Source: Octopus bimaculoides (lineage: Eukaryota). Taken from it: a stretch of 48,110 bases of DNA. The notes below the pieces were generated by a model. The model was not told the origin of the DNA. It saw only the letters and a program-made list of their open reading frames with translations, and did no database searches. Of the stretch, positions 35,255-48,110 are shown in pieces. The number at the start of each line of letters is the position of its first letter. The stretch's first letter is position 1. The position numbers and the translations under genes are program-made. The DNA is taken from contig NC_069006.1 of assembly GCF_001194135.2 (NCBI RefSeq), positions 15,484,273 through 15,532,382 of the forward strand, given 5' to 3'.

Positions 35255-35841
35255 GTTATTCCAGTTGAGTACTTGGAGTCGATGTAAGCGACTATCGCCC
35301 TCCCCGCAATTTCAGGCCTATCGTACAAAGGACTATTTTCTATGTTATTATGGCTTCCACCATTATTATTATTATTAAGGCGGCGAGCTGGCAGAATCGT
35401 TAGCACGCAAGGTGAAATGCTTAGCGGTATTTCGTCCGTCTTTTACGTTCCGAGTTCAAATTCCGCCGAAGTCGACTTTGTCTTTCATCATTTCGAGGTC
35501 GATTAAATAAGTACCAGTAATGTACTGGGTCGATGTAGCTGACTTAATCCCCCTCCTCAAAGCTGCTCTTGTGGCAAGAAATTTGATATCAATATTATTA
35601 TCATTATTATTAAGGCGGCGAGATGGCAGAATCGTTAGCACACCGGGCGAAATGCTTAGCGGTATTTCGTCCGCCTTTTACGTTCTGAGTTCAAATTCCA
35701 CCGATGTCGACTTTGCTTTTCATCCTTTCGGGGTCGATAAATTAAGTACCTGTCTAGCACTGGGGTCGATGTAATCGACTTAATCCCTTTCCCCAAATAT
35801 GAGGCCTTGAACTTATAATAGAAAGGATTATTATTATTATT
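35255..35841 (+). mobile_element. Chain of three family A SINEs (3' fragment, full copy from 35379, full copy from 35614)
   Basis: Each full copy begins TT-AA-GGCGGCGAG immediately after the (TTA)n tail of the previous one. The tails are A2-like, A3-like and A2-like. Confidence 0.9.
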
Positions 35842-36591: not shown

Positions 36592-36847
36592 ATGCAGTCT
36601 TTTTGTAAATCAATAACAATTGATGTGAATCAATTGTTGTTCAGCAATGTTATCCCCATTTTCTGTTTTCTTTAAATTTTGATTCCTGATAAACTCTTGT
36701 TTATTTTTGTCTTTACCTATAATTTATGAGCATAACAGATTTTCCATGTTTAAATATAGATAATATACCGGTAGTATAATGGATACTTTTATCCTTTAGA
36801 CGGTTATTTTGACCTCTAACTCAACTAACCTTCTATACCTATATATA

Positions 36848-36883
<36 letters not shown>

Positions 36884-37004
36884 TGTNNNNNNNNNNNNNN
36901 NNNNNNNNNNNNNNNNNNNNNNNNNNNNNNNNNNNNNNNNNNNNNNNNNNNNNNNNNNNNNNNNNNNNNNNNNNNNNNNNNNNNNNATATATATATATAT
37001 ATAC

Positions 37005-40000
37005 AACTAACGGACAAAAGAATGATGGAACGAACGTACGTACGAACGAGCGAATGAACGAACGAACTTACGCACGAACAATTGAATGAACGAACGTACG
37101 AACGAATGAACATACGTACGTACGTATGTACAAACGAACGATAGTAATGAAGGAACGAACGAACGTACGAACGAATAAACGTACATACTTACGTATGTAC
37201 GAACGAACGATAGTACTTACGTACGTACGAACGAAGGAACGTAATGAGCGTACGAACATACGTACGAACATACATACGAATAAACGAACGTACGAAGATG
37301 CGTTCGAACGAACGCACATTTGTACGTACGTGCGTTCGTTCGTACGCACGTACGTTCGTACGCACATACGTTCGTTCCTTCGTTTGTTCGTACGTTCGCT
37401 CATACGTCCGTTCGTACGTACGTTTGTTCGTTCGTACGTAAGTTCGTAATTACGTTCGTTCGTACGTACGTTCTTTCGTTCGTACATACGTACGTACGTA
37501 AGTTTATTCGTTCGTTCAATTGTTCATTTTCTCGTTCGTTCTTTCATACGTACGTTTGTTCATTCCTTTGTTCGTTTGTAATTTCGTACGTTCGTTCGTT
37601 CCATCGTTCTTTTGTCCGTTAGTTCGTCTGTATATTCGTACGTTCGTGCGTTGCTACGTTCGTTCGTACGTACGTTCGTTTCTTCGTTCGTTCTTTCGTT
37701 CGTTAGTTCGTACGTACGTTTGTCCGTTCGTACGTTTGTTCGTTCTTTCGTACGTACATTCGTACGTACGTAAGTTCTTTCGTTCGTTCGTACGTATGTT
37801 CGTACGTTCGTTTGTACGTACGTTCGTTCGAACGTACGTACGTTCTTTCGTACGTACGTTCGTTCGTTCGTACGTTCATACGTACGTTCGTTCGTTTGTT
37901 TCTACATTTGTTCGTTCGTTCGTTTCTTCGTTTGTTTGTTCGTTCGAACGTACGTTCGTTTGTTTGTACATACGTACGTACGATCGTTCGTACGTACTTT
38001 CGTTCGTATGTTCGTACGTTCGATCCTTCGTACGTACATTCTATCATTCGTTCGTATATACGTACGTACGTAAGTTTATTCGTACGTACGTTCGTTCCTT
38101 CATACGTACATTCGTTCTTTTGTTCGTTCGTTTGTGCGTATGTACATTTGTTCGTTCGTTCGTACGTACGTTCGTTCGTACGTTCGTTCGTAAGTTTGGT
38201 CGTACGTACGTTCGTTCGTATGTACGTACTATCGTTCGTTAGTTTGTACGTTCGTTCCTATGTACGTGCGTTCGTTTGCACGTACGTACGTTTGTTCGTT
38301 CGCAGGTTCGTTAGTTCATTCCTTCATTACGTTCGTTCTTACGTACGTACTATCGCTCGTTCGCAAATACGTACGTACCTAAGTTTATTCGTACGTACGT
38401 TAGTTCGTTCCTTCATTACGTATGTTCTTTCGTGTGTTCGATCGTACGTACGTAGGTTTATTCGTACGTACGTTCGTTCAATTGTTCATTCGTTCGTTCA
38501 TACGTACGTTCCTTCGTTCTTTTGTCCGTTCGTTCGTTCGTTCGTCTGTACGTACGTACTTTCGTGCGTACATTCGATCGTTTGTTCGTTCGTTCGTTCG
38601 TATGTTCGTTCGTACTTACGTTCGTTCGTTTGTACGTTCGTTCGTACGTTCATTCGTTTGTACGTTCGTTCGTACGTACGTTCGTTCGTATGTAGGTATG
38701 TACGTTCGTTCGTTCGTACTTTCGTACGTACGTAAGTTTATTCTTTCTTACGTAAGTTCGTTTGTTCAATTGTTCACTTGTTCGTTCGTACATAAGTTCG
38801 TTCGTTCGTACGTTCTCTCATTCGTTTGTTCGTACGTTCGCTCATACGTTCGTTCGTACGTACGTTTGTTCGTTCGTACGTACGTTCTTTCCTTCGTTCG
38901 TACGTACGTTCGTTCGTTCGTTCGTACTTACGTACGTTCGGTGTTTCGCTCGTTCGTACGTACGTGCGTTCGTTTGTTTGTTCTTTCGTACGTACGTTCG
39001 TTCGTAAGTACGTTTGTTCCTTCATTACGTTCGTTCGTTCGTACGTACGTACGTTCGTTCGATTGTTCGTTCGTACGTTCGTTCGTTCGTACGTACATTC
39101 ATTCGTTCGTTCGCACGTTCGTTCGTTCGTTCCTTCATTACGTTCGTTTATACGTACGTACTATCGTTCGTTCGTTCGTTCCTTCATTACATTCGTTCTT
39201 ACGTACGTACTATCGTTCGTTCGCAAATACGTACGTACCTAAGTTCGTTCGTTCGTACTTACATTTGTTCGTTCGTTCGTTCGTACGTACGTTTGTTCGT
39301 TCGTTCGCTTCTTAGTTCGTTCGATTGTTCGTTTGTACGTTTGTTCGTACGTTTGTTCGTAGGTACGTTCGTTCGTTCGTACATTCGTTCGTTCGTTCGA
39401 ACGTTCGTTCCTTCCTTCCTTCATTACGTTCGTTCTTACGTACGTACTATCGTTCGTTCGCAAATACTACGTACCTAAGTTTATTCGTATGTACGTTAGT
39501 TCGTTCATGCTTTCGATTGTACGAACGTTCGTACTTACTTACGTACGTTCGTTCGTACGTACGTAAGTTTATTCGTACGTACGTTCGTTCAATTTTTCAT
39601 TCGTTCGTTCATACGTACGTTCCTTCGTTCTTTTGTCCGTTCGTTCGTTCGTCTTTACGTACGTATGTTCGTGCGTTCTTCGTTCGTTTGTTCGTTCGTT
39701 CGTATGTTCGTTCGTTTGTACGTTCGTTCGTTTGTACGTTCGTTCTTTCGTACGTACGTTCGTTTGTATGTAGGTACGTACGTTCGTTCGTTCGTTCGTA
39801 CGTACGCACTTACGTACGTTCGTACATACGTACGTTCTTTTGTTCGTTCGTTCCTTCATTTCGTACGTACTATCGTTCGTTCGTACATACGTACGTACGC
39901 AAGTTTATTCTTTTTTACGTAAGTTCGTTCGTTCAATTGTTCACTTGCTCGTTCGTTCTTTTGTTCGTTCGTACATACGTTCGTTCGTTCGTACGTTCTC

Positions 40001-43000
40001 TCATACGTTCGTTCGTACGTACGTTTGTTTGTGCTTTCATTCGTACTTACGTACGTTCGTTCGTTCGTTCGTANNNNNNNNNNNNNNNNNNNNNNNNNNN
40101 NNNNNNNNNNNNNNNNNNNNNNNNNNNNNNNNNNNNNNNNNNNNNNNNNNNNNNNNNNNNNNNNNNNNNNNNNNNNNNNNNNNNNNNNNNNNNNNNNNNN
40201 NNNNNNNNNNNNNNNNNNNNNNNNNNNNNNNNNNNNNNNNNNNNNNNNNNNNNNNNNNNNNNNNNNNNNNNNNNNNNNNNNNNNNNNNNNNNNNNNNNNN
40301 NNNNNNNNNNNNNNNNNNNNNNNNNNNNNNNNNNNNNNNNNNNNNNNNNNNNNNNNNNNNNNNNNNNNNNNNNNNNNNNNNNNNNNNNNNNNNNNNNNNN
40401 NNNNNNNNNNNNNNNNNNNNNNNNNNNNNNNNNNNNNNNNNNNNNNNNNNNNNNNNNNNNNNNNNNNNNNNNNNNNNNNNNNNNNNNNNNNNNNNNNNNN
40501 NNNNNNNNNNNNNNNNNNNNNNNNNTTACGTACGTTCGTTGTTTCGTTCGTTCTTACGTACGTGCGTTCGTTTGTTTGTTTGTTCGTTCGTACGTACGTT
40601 CGTTCGTACGTTTGTTCCTTCATTACGTTCGTTCTTTAGTACGTACGTTTGTTCGTTCGTACGTACATACATTCGTTCGTTCGTACGTACATACATTCGT
40701 TCGTTCGTACGTACGTTTGTTTGTGCTTTCATTCGTACTTACGTACGTTCGTTCGTTCGTTCGTACTTCGTTCGTTCGTACGTATGTTCGTGCGTACGTT
40801 CGTACGTTCGTACGTTTGTTCATTCATTACGCTCGTTCGTTCATACGTACGTACGTTCTTTCGTTCGTACGTATGTTCGTGCGTACGTTTGTTCGTTCCT
40901 TCACTACGTTCCTTCGTTCGTTCGTACGTACAATCCTTCCTTCGTTCGTGCGTACGTACTTAAGTTTGTTCAATTGTTCATTTGTTCGTTCATACGTACG
41001 TTCCCTCGTTCTTTTGTCCGTTCCTTCGTTCGTGCGTACGTTCGTTCGTACCTTCTTTTGTTCGTTCGTACATAATTTCGTTTGTACGTTTGTTTGTTCG
41101 TACGTACGTTCATTCGTTCGTACGTACGTTTGTTCGTTTGCTCGTACGTACATTCGTTCGTTCGTTCGTTCGTACGTCCTTTCGTTCGTACTTACGTACG
41201 TACCTTCGTTCTTTCGTTCGTACGTTCGTTTGCTCGTACGTATGTTCGTTCGTACATACGTTCGTTTGTTCGTACGTACGTCCCTTCGTACGTATATACG
41301 TATGTTCGTTCGTTCGTTTGTTTGTTCATACGTACGTATGTGCGTACGTACGTTCGTTCCTACGTGGGTACGTACGTTTTTTCGTTCGTACGTACATTCG
41401 TTCGTACGTACGTTCGTTGTTTCGTTCGTTCGTTCGTTCGTTCGTATGTACGTTTCTTCGTACGTTCCTTCGTACGTACATTCGTTCGTACGTACGTATA
41501 TACGTTCGTTCGTTCGTATGTACGTTCGTTCGTTCGTACGTTCGTTCGTTTCTACGTTCGTACGTACGTTCGTTTTTACGTACGTACTATCGTTCGTTCG
41601 TACATAAGTACGTACGTAAGTTTATTCGTTCGTACGTATGTTCGTTCGTTCCTTCATTACGTTCCTTGGTTCGTACGTACGTAAGTACTATCGTTTGTTT
41701 GTACATACGTACGTACGTATGTTTATTCGTTCGTACGTTCGTTCGTTCGTTCAATTGTTAGTTCGTTCGTTGATACGTACGTTCGTTCGTTCCTTCGTTC
41801 TTTAGTTCGTCTGTATGTTTTTACGTACGTTCGTTCCTGCGTTCGTACGTACGTACGTTCGTTTCTTCGTTCCTTCCTTCGTGCGTTCGTACGTACGTTC
41901 GTTTGTTCGTTCGTACGTACGTTCCTTCCTTCGTTCGTTCGTTCACACGAACGTTCGTTCTTTCGATCTTTCGTTCGTTTGTACGTTCGTACGTACATTC
42001 GTTCGTTCGTTCGTACTTTCGTACGTTCGTTCTTTCGTTCGTTCCTTCGTTTGTACGTTCGTACGTACATTCGTTCGTACGTTTATTCGTACGTAGCACT
42101 TACGTACGTTCGTACGTACGTACGTTCCTTTGTTCGTTCGTTCCTTCATTACGTTCGTTCGTACATACGTACGTACGTAAGTTCGTTNNNNNNNNNNTTC
42201 GTTCGTACGTTTATTCGTACGTAGCACTTACGTACGTTCGTACGTACGTACGTTCCTTTGTTCGTTCGTTCCTTCATTACGTTCGTTCGTACATACGTAC
42301 GTACGTAAGTTCGTTCGTTCAATTGTTCACTTGCTCGTTCGTTCTTTTGTTCGTTCGTACATTCTCTCATTGGTTTGTTCGTACGTTCTCTCATACGTTT
42401 GTTCGTTCGTACGTACGTTCTTTCCTTCGTTCGTTCTTTCGTTCGTATTTACGTACGTTCGTTGTTTCGTTCGTTCTTACGTACATGCGTTCGTTTGTTT
42501 GTTTGTTCGTTCGTACCTACGTTTGTTCCTTCATTACGTTCGTTCTTTCGTACGTACGTTTGTTCGTTCGTTCGTACGTACGTTTGTTTGTGCTTTCATT
42601 CGTACTTACGTACGTTCGTTCGTTCGTTCGTTCGTTCGTTCGTTCGTACGTATGTTCGTGCGTACGTTCGTACGTTTGTTCATTCATTACGGTCGTTCGT
42701 TCATACGTACGTACGTTCTTTCGTTCGTACGTTCGTTCGTACGTATGTTCGTGCGTACGTTTGTTCGTTCCTTCACTACGTTCCTTCCTTCGTTCGTACG
42801 TACAATCCTTCCTTCGTTCGTACGTACGTACTTAAGTTTATTCGAACGTACGTTTGTTCAATTGTTCATTTGTTCGTACATTCGTTCGTAAGTACGTTCG
42901 CTCGTTCAATTGTTCGTTCGTTCGTTCATACCTACGTTGTTTCATTCTTTTGTTCTTTCCTTTGTATGTTCGTTCGTATGTTTGTTCCTTCTTTCGTTTG

Positions 43001-46000
43001 TTCGTTCGTACGTTCGTTCGTTCGTACGTACATTCGTTCGCACATTCGTTCGTTCGTTCCTTCATTACGTTCGTTCGTACGTACATACTATCGTACGTTC
43101 GTACATACGTACGTACCTAAGTTTATTCTTACGTTCGTTCGTTCACACGTACGTTCGTTCTTTTGTTCGTGCGTTCGTACGTACGTTCGTTCCTTAGTTC
43201 GTTCGTACGTACATTCATTCGTTCGTACATACGTTCGTTCGTTAGTTCGTACGTACGTTTGTCCGTTCGTACGTATGTTCATTCGTTCCTTCATTACGTT
43301 CCTTCCTTCGTTCGTACGTACTATCGTTCGTTCGTTCGTTCATACGTACGTTCGTTCGTTCGTCTGTATGTGCGTACGTTCGTTCGTACCTTCGTTAGTT
43401 CGTTCGTACGTTTGTTCGTTTGCTCGTACGTACATTCGTTCGTTCGTACGTCCTTTCGTTCGTACTTACGTTCGTTTGTTCGTACGTATATTTGTTCGTA
43501 CGTACGTTCCTTCGTACGTTAGTACGTACGTTTGTTCGTTTTCTCGTACGTATATTCGTTCGTTCGTACGATCCTTCGTACGTACGTTCGTTCGTTCGTA
43601 CGTATATACAGTTCGTTCGTTCGAATGTACGTTCGTTCGTACGTACGTTCGCTCGTTCGTTCTTTCATTCGTTCGTACGAAATTTCGTTCGTTCGTACGT
43701 TCATACGTACGTTCGTTCGTTTGTTTGTACATTCATTCGTTCGTTTCTTCGTTTGTTTGTTCATTCGTTCGTTTGAACATACGTTCGTTTGTTTGTACAT
43801 ACGTACGTACGCTCGTTCGTACGTACTTTCGTACGTTCGTTCCTTCATTACGTTCCTTCGTACGTATGTACTATCGTTCGTTCGTACATACGTACGTACG
43901 TAAGTTTATTCGTACGTACGTTTGTTCCTTCATACGTCGTTCGTTCTTTTGTTCGTTCGTTTGTGCGTATGTACATTTGTTCGTTCGTACGTTCGTTCGT
44001 ACGTTTGGCCGTACTTACGTTCGTTCGGTAGTATGTACGTACTATCGTTCGTTCCTTTGTACGTTCGTTCGTACGTACGTGCGTTCGTTTGTACGTACGT
44101 ACGTTTGTTCGTTCTGTAGTTCGTACTTACGTTCGGTTGTACGTAAGTTCATTCTTTCGTACGGACCTTCGTTTGTTCATACATACGTACGTACGTAAGT
44201 TTATTCGTTCGTACGTACGTTCGTTCGTTAAATTGTTCGTTTGTTCATACGTACGTTCGTTCTTTTGTTCGTTCGTTCGTACGTACGTTTGTTCGTTCGT
44301 ACGTTTGTTCGTTCGTACGTTCGTTAGTTCGTAATTTCGTTCGTTCGTTCGTGCGTACGTACGTTTGTTCCTTCATTACCTTCGTTCGTTCGTTCGTACG
44401 TACGTACTATCTTTCGTTCGTACATACTTACGTACGTAAGTTTATTCGTTTGTATGTATGTTCGTACGTTCGTTCGTTCCTTCATTACGTTCCTTCGTTC
44501 GTACGTACGTAAGTACTATCGTTCGTTTGTACATACGTACGTACGTATGTTTATTCCTTCGTACGTTCGTTCGTTCAATTGCTTGTTCGTTCGTAGAAAA
44601 GTACGTTTGTTTGTACCTTCGTTCTTTTGTCCGTTCGTACGTTCGTTCGTTTCTTCGTTCGTACGTTCCTTCGTTTGTTTGTTCGTTTGAAAGTACGTAC
44701 GTTCTTTCGTACGTACGTTCGTTCATTCGTTCGTATGTTCGTACGTACGTACTATCGTTCGTTCGTACATACTTACGTATGTCAGTTCATTCTTTCGTAA
44801 GTGCGTTCGTTCATTTGTTCGTTCGTTCGTTCATACGTACGTAGTTTCGTTCTTTTGTTCTTTCGTTTGTATGTTCGTTCGTATGTTCGTTCGTTTGTTC
44901 GTTCGTACGTACTTCGTTCGTTCGTTCGTACGTACATTCGTTCGTTCGTTCGGTCCTTCATTACGTTCGTTCGTACGTACATACTATCGTTCGTTCGTAC
45001 ATACATACGTACCTAAGTTTATTCTTACGTTCGTTCGTTCAATTGTCGTTCGTTCATACGTACGTTCGTACGTACGTGCGTGCGTTCGTACATACGTTCG
45101 TTCCTTCGGTCGTTCGTACGTACATTCATTCCTTCGTACACACGTACGTTCGTTAGTTCGTATGTACGTTTGTCCGTTCGTACGTTTGTTCGTTCTCTCG
45201 TACGTACATTCGTACGTACGTAAGTTCTTTCGTTCGTTCATTCGTATGCTCGTACGTACGTTCGTTCGTACGTACTATCGTTCGTTCGTACATACGTACG
45301 TACATAAGTTTGTTCGTACGTACGTTCGTTCGTTCGTTCATACGTCCGTAGGTTTGTTCTTTTGCTCGTTCGTTTGTACGTTCGTTCGTACGTTTGTGCG
45401 TTCGTTCGTACGTACGTTCGTTCGTTTCTTCGTTCATACGTTCGTTCTTTCGTTCGTTCGTACGATTGTTCGTTCGTACGTTGGTTCGTTCGTACGTACA
45501 TTCGTCCGCACGTTCGTTCGTTCCTTCATTACGTTCGTTCCTACGTACGTACTTTCGTTCGTTCGCACATACGTACGTACCTAAGTTTATTCGTACGTAC
45601 ATTAGTTCGTTCCTTCATTACGTATGTTCGTTCGTGCGATCGATCTTACGTACGTTCGTTCGTACGTACGTAAGTTTATTCGTACCTACGTTCGGTCAAT
45701 TGTTCATTCGTTCGTTCATACGAACGTTCCTTCGTCCTTTTGTCCGTTCTTTCGTTCGTTCGTTCGTCTGTACGTACATTCGTTCATTTGTTCGTTCGTT
45801 CATATGTTCGTTCGTGCATACGTTCGTTCGTTTGTACGTTCGTTCGTTCGTTCGTACCTTCGTTCGTTCGTACGTTCGTTCGTATCTACGTACGTACGTT
45901 CGTTCGTTCGTACGTACGTTAGCTCGTTCGTTCGTTCTTTCGTTCGTTCTTTCGGTCGTTCGTTCGTACGTACATTTGTTCGTACATTCATTCGTACGTA

Positions 46001-48110
46001 CGCACTTACGTACGTTCGTACGTACGTTCTTTTGTTCGTTCGTTCCTTCATTACGTTCGTTCGTTCGTACGTACATACTATCGTTCGTTCGTACATAGGT
46101 TCGTTTGTATGTTCGTTCGTACGTACATTCAGTCGTTCGTACGTTGGTACGTACGTCTGTTCGTTTGCACGTACGTACATTCGTTCGTTCGTACGTCCTT
46201 TCGTTCGTACTTACGTACGTACGTTCGTTCGTACGTATGTTCGTTCGTACATACGTTCGTCTGTTCGTACGTACGTTCCTTCGTACGTATATACGTATGT
46301 TCGTTCGTGCGTACGTTCGTTCATACCTACGTTCGCTCGTTTGTTCGTACGTAAATACGATCGTTCGTGCGTACGTACGTACGTTCGGTCGTTCGATCTT
46401 TCATTCGTTCGTACATAAGTTCGTTCGTTCATACGTACCTTCGTTCGTTTGTTTGTACATTCGTTCGTTCGTTCGTTTCTTCGTTTGTTTGTTCGTTCGT
46501 ACGTACGTATGTTCGTTCGTACGTAGGTTTGTTCCTTCATTACGTTCGTTCGTTCGAACGTACGTTTGTTCGTTCGTACGTACATACATTCGTTCGTTCG
46601 TACTTACGTACGTTCGTTCGTACGTATGTTCGTGCGTACGTTCGTTCGTTCCTTCATTACGTTCCTTCCTTCGTTCGTACGTACTATCGTTCGTTCGTAC
46701 GTACGTAAGTTTAATCGTACTACGTTCGATCAATTGTTCATTCGCTCGTTCATACGTACGTTCCCGCGTTCTTTTGTGCGTTCGTTCGTCTGTACGTACG
46801 TTCGTGCGAACGTTCGTTCGTACCTTCGTTTGTTCGTTCGTTCTTTCGTTTGTTAGTTCGTTCTTTCTTTCGTTCGTACGTTCGTTCGTACATACGTTCG
46901 TTCGTACATACATTCGTTTGTACGTTCGTTCGTACGTTGGTAAGTACGTTTGTTCGTTTGCTCGTACGTACATTCGTTCGTTCGTTCGTACGTCCTTTCG
47001 TTCGTACTTACGTACGTACGTTCGTTCGTTCGTTCGTTCTTTCGTTCGTTTGTTCGTACGTATGTTCGTTCGTACATACGTTCGTTTGTTTGTATGTATG
47101 TTCGTTCGTACATACCTTCGTTCGTACATACGTTCGTTCGTACATACGTTCGTTTGTATGTTCGTTCGTACGTACATTCATTCGTTCGTACGTACATTTG
47201 TTCGTTCGTACGTATATACGTATGTTCGTTCGTGCGTACGTTCGTTCATACGTACGTTCGCTCGTTTGTTCGTACGTAAATACGATCGTTCGTGCGTACG
47301 TACGTACGTTCGGTCGTTCGTTCTTTCATTCGTTCGAACGTACGTAAGTTCGATCGTTCGTACGTTCATACGTACGTACGTTCGTTCGTTTGTTTGTACA
47401 TTCGTTTGTTTGTTCGTTCGTTCGTTCGTACGTACGTTCGTTTGTTTGTACATACGTACGTACGTTCGTACGTACTTTCGTTCGTATGTTCGTACGTTCG
47501 TTCCTTCATTACGTTCCTTCGGACGTACGTACTATCGTTCGTTCGTACATACGTACCTTCGTAAGTTTATTCGTACGTACTTTCGTTCCTTCATACGTAC
47601 GTTCGTCCTTTTGTTCGTTCCTACCTTCTTTCGTACGTACGTTCGTTCGTATGTACGTACTATCGTTCGTTCGTACGTACGTGCGTTCGTTTGTACGTAC
47701 GTCCGTTTGTTCGTTCTGTGGTTCGTACGTACGTTCGTTCGTACGTACATTCGTTTGCTCATACATACGTATGTTCGTACGTACGTAAGTTTATTCGTTC
47801 GTACGTAGGTTCAATTGTTCATTCGTTCGTTCATACGTACGTTCCTTCTTTCTTTTGTCCGTACGTTCGTTCGTACGTACGGTCGTTCGTATGTTCGTTC
47901 GTATATACGTTATTTCCTTCGTACGTTACTTCGTTCGTACGTACGTACTATCGTTCGTACGTACGTACTATCGTTCGTTCGTACGTACGTTTGTTCGTTC
48001 GTACGTACATACATTCGTTCGTTCGTACTTACGTGCGTTCGTTTTTTTGTTCGTTCGCACGTACGTTCGTTCGTACGTACGTTTGTACCTTCATTACGTT
48101 CGTTCGTTCA
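37005..48110. repeat. ~11 kb CpG-rich complex tetranucleotide satellite (CGTT/CGTA words) with higher-order structure; continues past the window end
   Basis: Continuous 4-nt periodic sequence. 37005-37317 is in the opposite orientation (GAAC words). Gaps at 40074-40525 and 42188-42197. Confidence 0.97.

What the first reader, a model, noticed from the sequence alone, without database searches (positions are those of the whole stretch)
37005..48110. An 11 kb CpG-saturated satellite written in 4-nt words
Seen: nearly every fourth position starts a CG (CGTT, CGTA), whereas the rest of the window is AT-rich and its simple repeats are TA/CA/GA/TTA. Rarer words (CTAT, AGTT-TATT, CAAT-TGTT, CTTT-TGTC, CTTA) mostly keep the 4-nt register; the recurrent CCTT-CATTA is a 5-nt exception. 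The array is dense in palindromes (ACGT, GTAC, CGTACG, TACGTA). Tiny seeds of the same motif occur at ~11137-11148 and ~22709-22722. Inference: a microsatellite that evolved into a complex satellite. It could act as a methyl-CpG/CXXC protein sink or a heterochromatic, centromeric or subtelomeric block, and I do not recognise it as a described family.
Basis: partly seen in the sequence, partly recalled or inferred. Interest (0 to 1): 0.75.

Follow-up and report, generated by a model that had tools for sequence, protein, structure and literature searches.

The report
Tetranucleotide-derived CpG-rich satellite array
The last 11 kb of the window is a real, non-coding block of degenerate 4-letter repeats (CGTT and CGTA) that grew from a microsatellite into a patchwork satellite. 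It is striking to look at but of an ordinary kind, and part of its assembled length is an assembly artefact.

Summary
From 37005 to the window end the sequence is a period-4 array. In register, 35.5% of words are CGTT, 26% are CGTA and 66% start with CG. CG-to-CG spacings are multiples of 4 in 97.5% of cases, and CpG o/e is 3.46 against 0.90 in the flank.

- The first ~300 nt are the array in inverted orientation (head-to-head switch near 37300-37335).
- The words follow a grammar of about (CGTT)2-3(CGTA)2.
- A landmark module recurs about 13 times at irregular 0.5-1.1 kb spacing.
- 94.5% of the array lies in blocks ≥80% identical to another place in it, mostly 80-92%, with one pair at 93-98%.
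- The 10-N gap is an unmerged overlap: 118 nt are duplicated exactly. The 452-N gap and a 100-N gap at the left edge are unresolved.

The long ORFs on both strands are by-products of the words; there is no Pfam or Rfam match.

A control on SINE copies in the same window shows no CpG-specific decay, so CpG persistence needs no special explanation and nothing supports methylation.

Best reading: a neutral satellite derived from a microsatellite, built by slippage plus block duplication. Any centromeric, subtelomeric or methyl-CpG-sink role is untested. Novelty: a new member of a known kind.

The parts
36842..36886 (.). (TATG)11 microsatellite abutting the array region. TATG is the C>T derivative of the array word TACG/CGTA.
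   Evidence: TRF; sequence
36887..36986 (.). 100-N assembly gap between the unique flank and the array. The array is attached to this flank by scaffolding only.
   Evidence: no end overlap
37005..37305 (-). Inverted head of the array (GAAC/GTAC words). It carries the landmark module in minus orientation and is 90-92% identical to the reverse complement of 41628-41753 and 44452-44576.
37300..37335 (.). Head-to-head strand-switch junction (…GCGTTCGAACGAACGCACATTTGTACGTACGTGCGTTCGTT…). It lies inside a contig, with no N. 36995-37640 folds as a ~640-nt imperfect hairpin.
   Evidence: -219 kcal/mol, z -17.6; interior control -105 kcal/mol, z -5
37306..40073 (+). Array, forward orientation (CGTT/CGTA words), first contig.
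38321..38545 (+). Example of the recurrent landmark module, in the order CCTTCATTAC – GTACTATCG – AAGTTTATTC – CAATTGTTCA – CTTTTGTCCGT. About 13 copies occur at irregular 0.5-1.1 kb spacing.
   Evidence: paralogous blocks
40074..40525 (.). 452-N gap. Its flanks map to overlapping positions of the paralog at 42449-42474. The true size is unknown.
40526..42187 (+). Array, second contig.
42188..42315 (.). 10-N pseudo-gap plus an artefactual 118-nt exact duplicate of 42070-42187 (unmerged contig overlap).
   Evidence: Three of the four other 10-N gaps (8934-8943, 246 nt exact; 27600-27609, 22 nt; 7611-7620, offset) behave the same way; 22829-22838 shows only a 1-nt match.
42316..48110 (+). Array, third contig. 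It runs off the end of the window, so the total length is a minimum.
   Evidence: no 60-nt stretch loses the period-4 signal; no inserted element
22709..22726 (.). The other seed is AACGTACGTACG at 11177-11188.

Best explanation
This is a non-coding satellite array that began as a tetranucleotide microsatellite, (CGTT)n/(CGTA)n, which is (AACG)n/(ACGT)n on the other strand.

It grew in two ways. The first was replication slippage in 4-nt steps. This was probably helped by the self-complementary CGTA runs, which form short hairpins. The second was repeated duplication or unequal exchange of 0.1-0.6 kb blocks that already carried point-mutated words. At least one fold-back or inversion then gave the inverted head.

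It has since drifted to about 70% word purity. Its CpG richness persists because CpGs in this genomic neighbourhood are not hypermutable, which is consistent with sparse germline methylation of intergenic DNA.

I think it has no sequence-specific function. Any effect would be structural, as a repeat block that may be packaged as heterochromatin.

Shown: the anatomy, the mutational pattern, the absence of coding or RNA signal, and the assembly artefacts. Inferred: the slippage and unequal-exchange mechanism, neutrality, and chromatin state.
For: - Period-4 statistics and word table.
- Word grammar: runs of two words are over-represented (T-class run-2 161 against run-1 75; A-class 191 against 149), and autocorrelation bumps at 16-20 nt.
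- Landmark modules recur in a fixed order.
- 94.5% of the array lies in ≥100-nt blocks ≥80% identical to another location, 77.6% at ≥85% and 26.7% at ≥90%. Random in-register pairs average 57% with a maximum of 78.5%.
- Block offsets are irregular, with only a weak mode at 1.0-1.2 kb.
- Indels between paralogs are mostly multiples of 4.
- There are 74 hairpin-like sites against 25.7±4.6 in shuffles.
- SINE control: CpG transitions 8.9% per site, non-CpG C/G 8.5%, A/T 4.3%. Flank CpG o/e is 0.90.
- No Pfam hit for array ORFs on either strand; no Rfam family and no tRNA.
- Similar short arrays with the same vocabulary exist elsewhere: L017, ~450 nt in an intron next to a CHD1L-like exon, and translated CGTT-type microsatellites in other eukaryotes.
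Against: - Within the array, transitions at CpG positions (7.0% per site) exceed those at other, mostly T/A, positions (2.0%) by 3.5-fold. The C/G against A/T ratio in the SINE control is about 2-fold. A modest methylation contribution therefore cannot be excluded.
- A paper on what I believe is the source genus reports relatively higher methylation on 'satellite' repeats than on transposons (PMC9476566).
- Genome-wide copy number and chromosomal position are unknown, so a positional role is not excluded.
- No interspersed element has inserted in 10.5 kb, although the flank holds at least 12 SINE copies in 37 kb. That could mean ongoing turnover rather than passive decay.
- Short-read assembly can only resolve diverged copies, so the lack of near-identical units may be an ascertainment effect.
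Confidence: 0.75

Rival explanations
1. The array is one locus of a chromosome-position-specific satellite (centromeric, pericentromeric or subtelomeric) with a structural role in chromosome biology.
For: - The array is ≥10.5 kb, runs off the window end and is strongly strand-asymmetric.
- It contains no transposon insertion.
- It has a strand switch like those seen in large satellites.
- The window may end where the scaffold ends, as happens at large repeat blocks.
Against: - There is no regular higher-order repeat. Apart from one pair at 93-98%, blocks are 80-92% identical, so there is no recent homogenisation.
- The window has no telomere repeat.
- The left neighbour is ordinary SINE- and microsatellite-rich DNA.
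- The paper library describes no such satellite.
- Position and abundance cannot be tested here.
Confidence: 0.12
2. The array acts as a methyl-CpG / CXXC-protein sink, or is a specifically methylated CpG-dense block.
For: - It has 1,711 CpGs in 10.6 kb and o/e 3.46.
- Transitions are 3.5-fold higher at CpG positions than at other positions within the array.
- Satellites are reported as relatively more methylated than TEs in Octopus bimaculoides (PMC9476566). This applies only if the window is from that genus, which I could not verify.
Against: - The SINE control in the same window shows no CpG-specific decay (8.9% against 8.5%), and a general C/G over A/T bias of about 2-fold explains most of the 3.5-fold excess.
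- Two thirds of the words still carry CG despite 6% divergence even at the most stable position.
- Flank CpG o/e is 0.90.
- The same paper reports that fewer than 10% of CpGs are methylated and that intergenic DNA is depleted of methylation.
- A single 11 kb locus is a small sink.
Confidence: 0.08
3. The array is largely an assembly artefact: a much shorter repeat inflated by, or chimerically joined in, short-read assembly and scaffolding.
For: - A 118-nt exact duplicate lies across the 10-N gap, and three of the four other 10-N gaps in the window show the same behaviour (246 nt, 22 nt, offset overlap).
- The 452-N gap's flanks map to overlapping positions of a paralog.
- A 100-N gap separates the array from the unique flank.
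- The youngest copies (39781-40967 against 42200-42839, 93-98%) sit at contig ends.
Against: - Three contigs of 3.1, 1.7 and 5.9 kb carry distinct, non-identical sequence.
- Outside the 118-nt duplicate, no ≥100-nt BLAST block reaches 95% identity. One gapped alignment reaches 98.2% over 219 columns.
- The substitution and 4n-indel pattern looks like evolution, not sequencing error.
- Artefact accounts for 128 positions for certain, and at most for the gap estimate.
Confidence: 0.05

Closest known systems
Human satellites II/III (HSat2/3), degenerate derivatives of the (CATTC)n pentamer (from established knowledge; not tested here)
   Same: A very short simple repeat diverged into a complex satellite. 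Mutated words mark longer, irregular blocks, the strands differ strongly in composition, and arrays contain strand switches or inversions.
   Different: The unit is 4 nt, not 5, and the words are unrelated. HSat2/3 form megabase pericentromeric arrays with well-defined subfamilies. Here only one ≥10.5 kb locus is seen, and abundance and position are unknown.
Bkm-type satellites, arrays of interspersed GATA and GACA tetranucleotides (from established knowledge; not tested here)
   Same: A long array is written with two alternating tetranucleotide words that differ at one position (GATA/GACA there, CGTT/CGTA here).
   Different: The words differ. Bkm has no CpG and is known for accumulating on sex chromosomes and for conservation across taxa. 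Neither property is testable here.
Ordinary (AACG)n / (ACGT)n microsatellites, the 'Simple_repeat' class of repeat maskers
   Same: The unit is the same. The window's own (TACG)4.5 at 22709-22726, the ~100-450-nt arrays in L003, L004 and L017, and translated CGTT-type runs in other eukaryotes all use this vocabulary.
   Different: This array is 20-100 times longer, only ~70% pure, and has block-level paralogy and an inverted segment. Microsatellites are typically under 1 kb and purer.
CpG islands
   Same: CpG o/e is far above 0.6 over many kb.
   Different: G+C is 43%, below the usual 50% criterion. The region is a tandem repeat, and no gene, promoter or Pfam-bearing ORF is nearby. It is not a CpG island in the regulatory sense.
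CpG-containing, methylated mollusc satellites such as SSUsat of Spisula subtruncata (PMC5537241, listed; abstract only read)
   Same: A tandem repeat in a mollusc for which methylation is the question of interest.
   Different: That satellite is described as making up G+C-rich intercalary heterochromatin and at least 1.3% of the genome. This array is made of 4-nt words, and its abundance and methylation are unknown.

Membership tests
Microsatellite / simple sequence repeat | Tandem unit of 1-6 nt | tested here: met
   Period 4; lag-4 identity 0.70
Microsatellite / simple sequence repeat | Short (tens to hundreds of bp) and fairly pure tract | tested here: not met
   At least 10.5 kb of sequenced array at ~70% match; only 61.5% of words are CGTT or CGTA
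Satellite DNA | Long head-to-tail tandem array, non-coding | tested here: met
   Array of ≥10.5 kb with no interruption; no Pfam, Rfam or tRNA
Satellite DNA | High genomic copy number and location in heterochromatin | not testable with these tools
   No eukaryotic genome, read set or chromatin data could be reached. The metagenome and prokaryote scans returned only short tracts.
Satellite DNA | Concerted evolution: recently homogenised units or a regular higher-order repeat | tested here: not met
   Offsets are irregular with a weak 1.0-1.2 kb mode. No ≥100-nt BLAST block reaches 95% apart from the artefact. The best pair is 93-98% once 4n-nt indels are allowed. Short-read assembly bias could hide younger copies.
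Centromeric satellite | CENP-A association and one array per chromosome at the primary constriction | not testable with these tools
   Needs ChIP or CUT&Tag, FISH or a chromosome-scale assembly
Subtelomeric repeat | Adjacency to telomere repeats | tested here: inconclusive
   No (TTAGGG)2 in the window, but the array runs off the window end
CpG island | Over 200 bp, G+C ≥ 50%, CpG o/e ≥ 0.6, usually at a promoter | tested here: not met
   o/e 3.46 but G+C 43.2%; no gene signal nearby
Repeat-protein gene (FVRS/YVRT repeats) | One reading frame under coding constraint, with homologues or domains | tested here: not met
   ORFs of up to 760 aa appear on both strands and in several frames, because CGTT/CGTA words and their complements contain no stop codon in any frame. 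There is no Pfam hit. The homology hits are translated microsatellites inside unrelated predicted proteins.

The most novel reading that the evidence does not exclude
The locus is one sample of a lineage-specific, genome-wide CpG-dense satellite that marks a defined chromosomal compartment (for example pericentromeres). On this reading it would be the sequence behind the reported exception that 'satellites' are methylated in an otherwise repeat-unmethylated cephalopod genome. Methylation of its alternating CGTACG blocks could also change DNA structure there. The Z-DNA propensity of methylated d(CGTACG) is known from crystallography; I cite it from memory and did not test it.
Probability: 0.08. 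Interest if true: 0.6.

Novelty: new member of a known kind. Interest (0 to 1): 0.3.

Why it matters
If the best reading is right, the value is mainly practical.

It is a clean, assemblable example of how a tetranucleotide microsatellite turns into a patchwork satellite. The slippage step (4n indels), the block-duplication step (landmark modules) and a strand switch are all visible in one locus.

It shows that a CpG-dense repeat can persist where CpGs are not hypermutable.

It flags concrete assembly problems. In this assembly most 10-N gaps (four of the five in this window) are unmerged overlaps that create false tandem duplicates. Here these are 118 nt in the array and 246 nt in a SINE 'tandem' at 8934-8943. 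Repeat statistics from this assembly are inflated accordingly.

Only if the motif proved abundant and position-specific would it bear on the open question of what cephalopod centromeres and heterochromatin are made of.

Tried and rejected
- Coding gene: rejected. ORFs lie on both strands and in several frames, there is no Pfam hit, and the words contain no stop codon.
- Known RNA family or tRNA-derived array: none found.
- Regular higher-order repeat: rejected. TRF finds only period 4 plus a weak 109-nt row, and the offset histogram has only a weak 1.0-1.2 kb mode.
- Simple local palindrome for the inverted head: only partly right. The head is collinear with 37303-37635, but at roughly the array's background identity, and it is closer (90-92%) to distant copies.
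- Satellite ORF used as protein bait to find other assemblies carrying the satellite: this found only short translated microsatellites in unrelated eukaryotes.
- 20-mer scans of metagenome and prokaryotic genome contigs: 27 loci, all isolated motifs or tracts ≤450 nt. L017 matches many places in the array at 76-82%, which is vocabulary-level similarity rather than orthology, and it shares no flank.
- Organism identification: failed.
  - The ZnF-like ORF had no homologues.
  - The SINE translation had no hits.
  - Sequence strings were found in no paper or supplement.
  - I recognise the window's dispersed ~220-nt SINE (consensus) from memory as the abundant octopus SINE, so the octopus context is a lead, not a result.
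- Methylation-driven CpG decay: not supported once the SINE control was run.
- Literature searches for an AACG/ACGT satellite in cephalopods or molluscs: nothing found.
- Bacterial-type promoter and terminator scan: it only re-describes the hairpin-prone CGTA blocks and is not applicable to a eukaryote.
Full report

Yes. From about 37005 to the last base of the window the sequence is a tandem array with a 4-nt period.
- TRF reports period 4 for 37028-37296 (unit GAAC), 37322-37500, 37507-40072 and 40529-48109 (units GTAC, TTCG, CGTT). That is about 2,600 units at 69-73% match.
- Self-identity is 0.70 at lag 4 and 0.63-0.66 at lags 8-24, but only 0.12-0.21 at lags that are not multiples of 4.
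- Of 1,665 successive CG-to-CG spacings, 97.5% are multiples of 4.
- The array has 1,711 CpGs in 10,644 read bases. CpG o/e is 3.46 and GpC o/e 0.18, against CpG o/e 0.90 in bases 1-36800.
- The + strand is T 43%, A 14%, and AT skew is about -0.53 throughout.

Read in register, the words are CGTT 35.5%, CGTA 26.0%, TGTT 6.9%, CATA 3.3%, CTTT 3.3%, CATT 3.2%, CCTT 2.5%, TGTA 2.4% and AGTT 2.1%. 66% of words start with CG. 'CpG-saturated' is therefore an overstatement, since density is 64% of the period-4 maximum.

- The 5-nt exception CCTTCATTA is real. It accounts for 17 of the roughly 30 +1 register shifts.
- The palindromes are real, with CGTACG occurring 419 times and TACGTA 319 times. They follow automatically from repeating the self-complementary word CGTA.
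- The seed at 22709-22726 is (TACG)4.5. The other seed is at 11177-11188, not 11137-11148.

**2. The gaps (tested first, as asked)**

*42188-42197 (10 N).* The 118 nt before the gap (42070-42187) are exactly repeated after it (42198-42315). This is an unmerged contig overlap. The sequence is continuous, 128 positions are redundant, and the 4-nt register is kept because the offset is 128. Three of the four other 10-N gaps in the window behave the same way: 246 nt of exact overlap at 8934-8943, 22 nt at 27600-27609 and an offset overlap at 7611-7620. Only 22829-22838 shows no meaningful overlap (1 nt).

*40074-40525 (452 N).* The ends do not overlap exactly. Both sides are the same array in the same orientation. 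The left end (39781-40072) aligns to a paralogous copy at 42200-42474 with 93% identity. The right end (40526-40800) aligns to 42449-42668 with 98% identity. The two contig ends therefore map to overlapping positions of that copy. The gap is either spurious or hides one or more whole units, and continuity and register across it cannot be established.

*36887-36986 (100 N, not flagged).* This gap lies between (TATG)11 and (TA)n plus the array. The array is therefore attached to this flank by scaffolding alone. The sequenced, non-redundant array is about 10.5 kb, and it runs off the window end.

**3.

(a) *Inverted head.* 37005-37305 is the array on the opposite strand (GAAC/GTAC words). It carries the landmark motifs in minus orientation. 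It is 90-92% identical to the reverse complement of 41628-41753 and 44452-44576. The head-to-head switch lies at about 37300-37335, inside a contig. 36995-37640 folds as a ~640-nt imperfect hairpin (-219 kcal/mol, z -17.6), against -105 kcal/mol (z -5) for an interior control.

(b) *Word grammar.* Runs of exactly two words of the same class are over-represented (T-class 161 against 75 singletons; A-class 191 against 149). Autocorrelation bumps at 16-20 nt. The commonest 16-mer is GTTCGTTCGTACGTAC, with 49 copies. Together these point to a cryptic unit of about (CGTT)2-3(CGTA)2.

(c) *Landmark module.* The string CCTTCATTAC – GTACTATCG – AAGTTTATTC – CAATTGTTCA – CTTTTGTCCGT recurs in that order about 13 times, at irregular 0.5-1.1 kb spacing.

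(d) *Block paralogy.*
- 94.5% of the array lies in ≥100-nt blocks that are ≥80% identical to another place in it. 77.6% lies in blocks at ≥85%, 26.7% at ≥90%, and none at ≥95% apart from the artefact.
- Random in-register 200-nt pairs average 57% identity, with a maximum of 78.5%.
- Offsets are irregular, with only a weak mode at 1.0-1.2 kb.

(e) *No interruption.* No 60-nt window loses the period-4 signal, so there is no inserted element. The flank, by contrast, carries at least 12 copies of one SINE in 37 kb.

**4. Mutational pattern**

Relative to the consensus word CGT(T/A), position 1 (C) is changed in 17% of words, mostly to T (13%). Position 2 (G) is changed in 20%, including to A in 9.2%. 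Position 3 (T) is changed in only 6%.

Across 12 paralogous block pairs, transitions occur at 7.0% of CpG sites and 2.0% of other sites. Indels are mostly 4, 8, 12 or 16 nt (28 of 47) or 1 nt (14).

This looked like methylation-driven CpG decay, so I ran a control on 11 dispersed SINE copies from the same window. Transitions there are 8.9% per site at CpG, 8.5% at non-CpG C/G and 4.3% at A/T. CpGs in this neighbourhood are therefore no more mutable than other C/G. A general C/G-to-T/A bias of about 2-fold explains most of the 3.5-fold figure, because almost every C or G in the array sits in a CpG. With flank CpG o/e at 0.90, a CpG-dense repeat can simply persist here. Its CpG richness needs no special explanation and gives no evidence of methylation.

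**5. Not a gene, not a known RNA**

ORFs of up to 760 aa appear on both strands and in several frames. CGTT/CGTA words and their complements read as RSFV, RTYV, NERT and so on, and contain no stop codon in any frame. There is no Pfam hit for array ORFs on either strand or for eight flank ORFs. There is no Rfam family and no tRNA.

A 567-aa array ORF used as bait retrieved only 100-150-aa translated CGTT/CATT/TACG microsatellites embedded in unrelated predicted proteins of other eukaryotes.

**6. Relatives elsewhere**

The commonest 20-mer, CGTTCGTTCGTACGTACGTT, was scanned against metagenome contigs (26 loci) and prokaryotic genomes (1 locus). Nearly all hits are isolated motifs or tracts ≤160 nt.

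The exception is L017, a 1.7 kb eukaryotic contig. It has a ~450-nt array with the same vocabulary directly after an exon that matches CHD1L (E 9e-8). It aligns at 76-82% to hundreds of places in the window's array and shares no flank. That is vocabulary-level similarity, not demonstrable orthology.

So short CGTT/CGTA tracts arise in other eukaryotes, but nothing comparable in length was reachable. Copy number, chromosomal position and species distribution could therefore not be tested.

**7. Source organism**

I could not establish the source with the tools. From memory, the window's SINE (consensus) is the abundant octopus SINE. The composition (about 37% G+C, dense di- and tetranucleotide microsatellites, CpG o/e about 0.9) fits an octopod. 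I treat this as a lead only.

If it is correct, two papers give context.
- PMC9476566 reports that fewer than 10% of CpGs are methylated in O. bimaculoides, and that intergenic DNA and TEs are depleted of methylation while 'satellites' are relatively higher.
- PMC6279123 reports that simple repeats make up 14.7% of the O. minor genome.

**8. Most likely mechanism**

A (CGTT)n/(CGTA)n microsatellite expanded by slippage in 4-nt steps. CGTA blocks separated by one or two CGTT words form short hairpins, with 74 sites against 25.7±4.6 in shuffles. That is a plausible promoter of slippage, though this link is an inference.

Point mutations then created marker words. Blocks of 0.1-0.6 kb carrying those markers were duplicated by unequal exchange or replication template switching, and one event inverted the head. 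The copies have since diverged to 80-92%, with one pair at 93-98%. I rate this neutral-satellite reading at about 0.75.

Rivals:
- a position-specific (centromeric, pericentromeric or subtelomeric) satellite, 0.12;
- a methyl-CpG/CXXC sink, 0.08;
- largely an assembly artefact, 0.05.

**9. Comparison with what is known**

In kind, the array resembles human satellites II/III, where a pentamer diverged into a complex satellite with strand switches. It also resembles Bkm GATA/GACA arrays, which are two-word tetranucleotide satellites. Both comparisons come from established knowledge, not from tests here.

- It is not a CpG island: G+C is 43% and there is no gene nearby.
- It is too long and too impure to be an ordinary microsatellite.
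- It meets the structural definition of satellite DNA. The abundance and heterochromatin criteria could not be tested. The homogenisation criterion is not met in the assembled sequence.

I found no published description of this motif as a satellite. That is an absence in one library, not proof of novelty.

**10. Verdict**

I rate the array a new member of a known kind, with interest 0.3. The most useful by-product is the demonstration that most 10-N gaps in this assembly (four of the five in this window) are unmerged overlaps that create false duplications.

Noticed in passing
window 8563-9285 (gap 8934-8943): The apparent 2.9-copy tandem of a ~256-nt SINE-containing unit is inflated. The 246 nt left of the 10-N gap are repeated exactly on its right, which marks an unmerged contig overlap.
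   Followed up: yes
window 7611-7620, 27600-27609, 22829-22838: The other 10-N gaps: 7611-7620 has an offset overlap of its flanks and 27600-27609 a 22-nt overlap within (TA)n. 22829-22838 shows only 1 nt. Most 10-N gaps in this assembly appear to stand for zero or negative gap size.
   Followed up: partly
window 2132-2529, 14534-15305, 21920-21995, 29452-29618, 32963-33088, 35380-35785: At least 12 dispersed copies (77-89% identical to the copy at 9062-9285) of a ~220-nt SINE-like element. I recall it as the abundant octopus SINE, but no tool could confirm the organism. The copies show equal transition rates at CpG and non-CpG C/G sites.
   Followed up: partly
window 36842-36886: (TATG)11 lies directly next to the array, across a 100-N gap. 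TATG is the C>T derivative of the array word TACG. Several other TGTA/TACA-type tracts occur in the flank (3411-3447, 27661-27718, 28457-28482).
   Followed up: no
window 10790-10854: (CGCA/CACA)n, 16 units, is the only other CpG-bearing period-4 repeat in the flank.
   Followed up: no
window 31061-31363: A G+C-rich 31-nt minisatellite of about 9.8 copies at 70% match, also read by TRF as a 91-nt period.
   Followed up: no
window 16001-17900: A strongly purine-skewed stretch (GC skew 0.72, AT skew 0.44 in 16001-17000) with GA-rich 16-34-nt repeats and an (AG)25 tract.
   Followed up: no
window 26375-26797 (-): A 140-aa ORF with two C-x2-C…H-x3-H-like spacings suggesting degenerate zinc fingers. 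It has no homologue in the 5.8-billion-protein search and no Pfam hit, so it is probably not a gene.
   Followed up: yes
L017 283-740 (OFHQ01036762.1, metagenome contig): An unidentified eukaryote carries a ~450-nt CGTT/CGTA/TGTT/CATT array immediately after an exon matching CHD1L (PDB 7otq_K, E 9e-8). The same word vocabulary therefore arises as an intronic tract elsewhere.
   Followed up: partly
window 34955-35050: A perfect 48-nt x 2 direct repeat in a CT-rich stretch (100% match).
   Followed up: no
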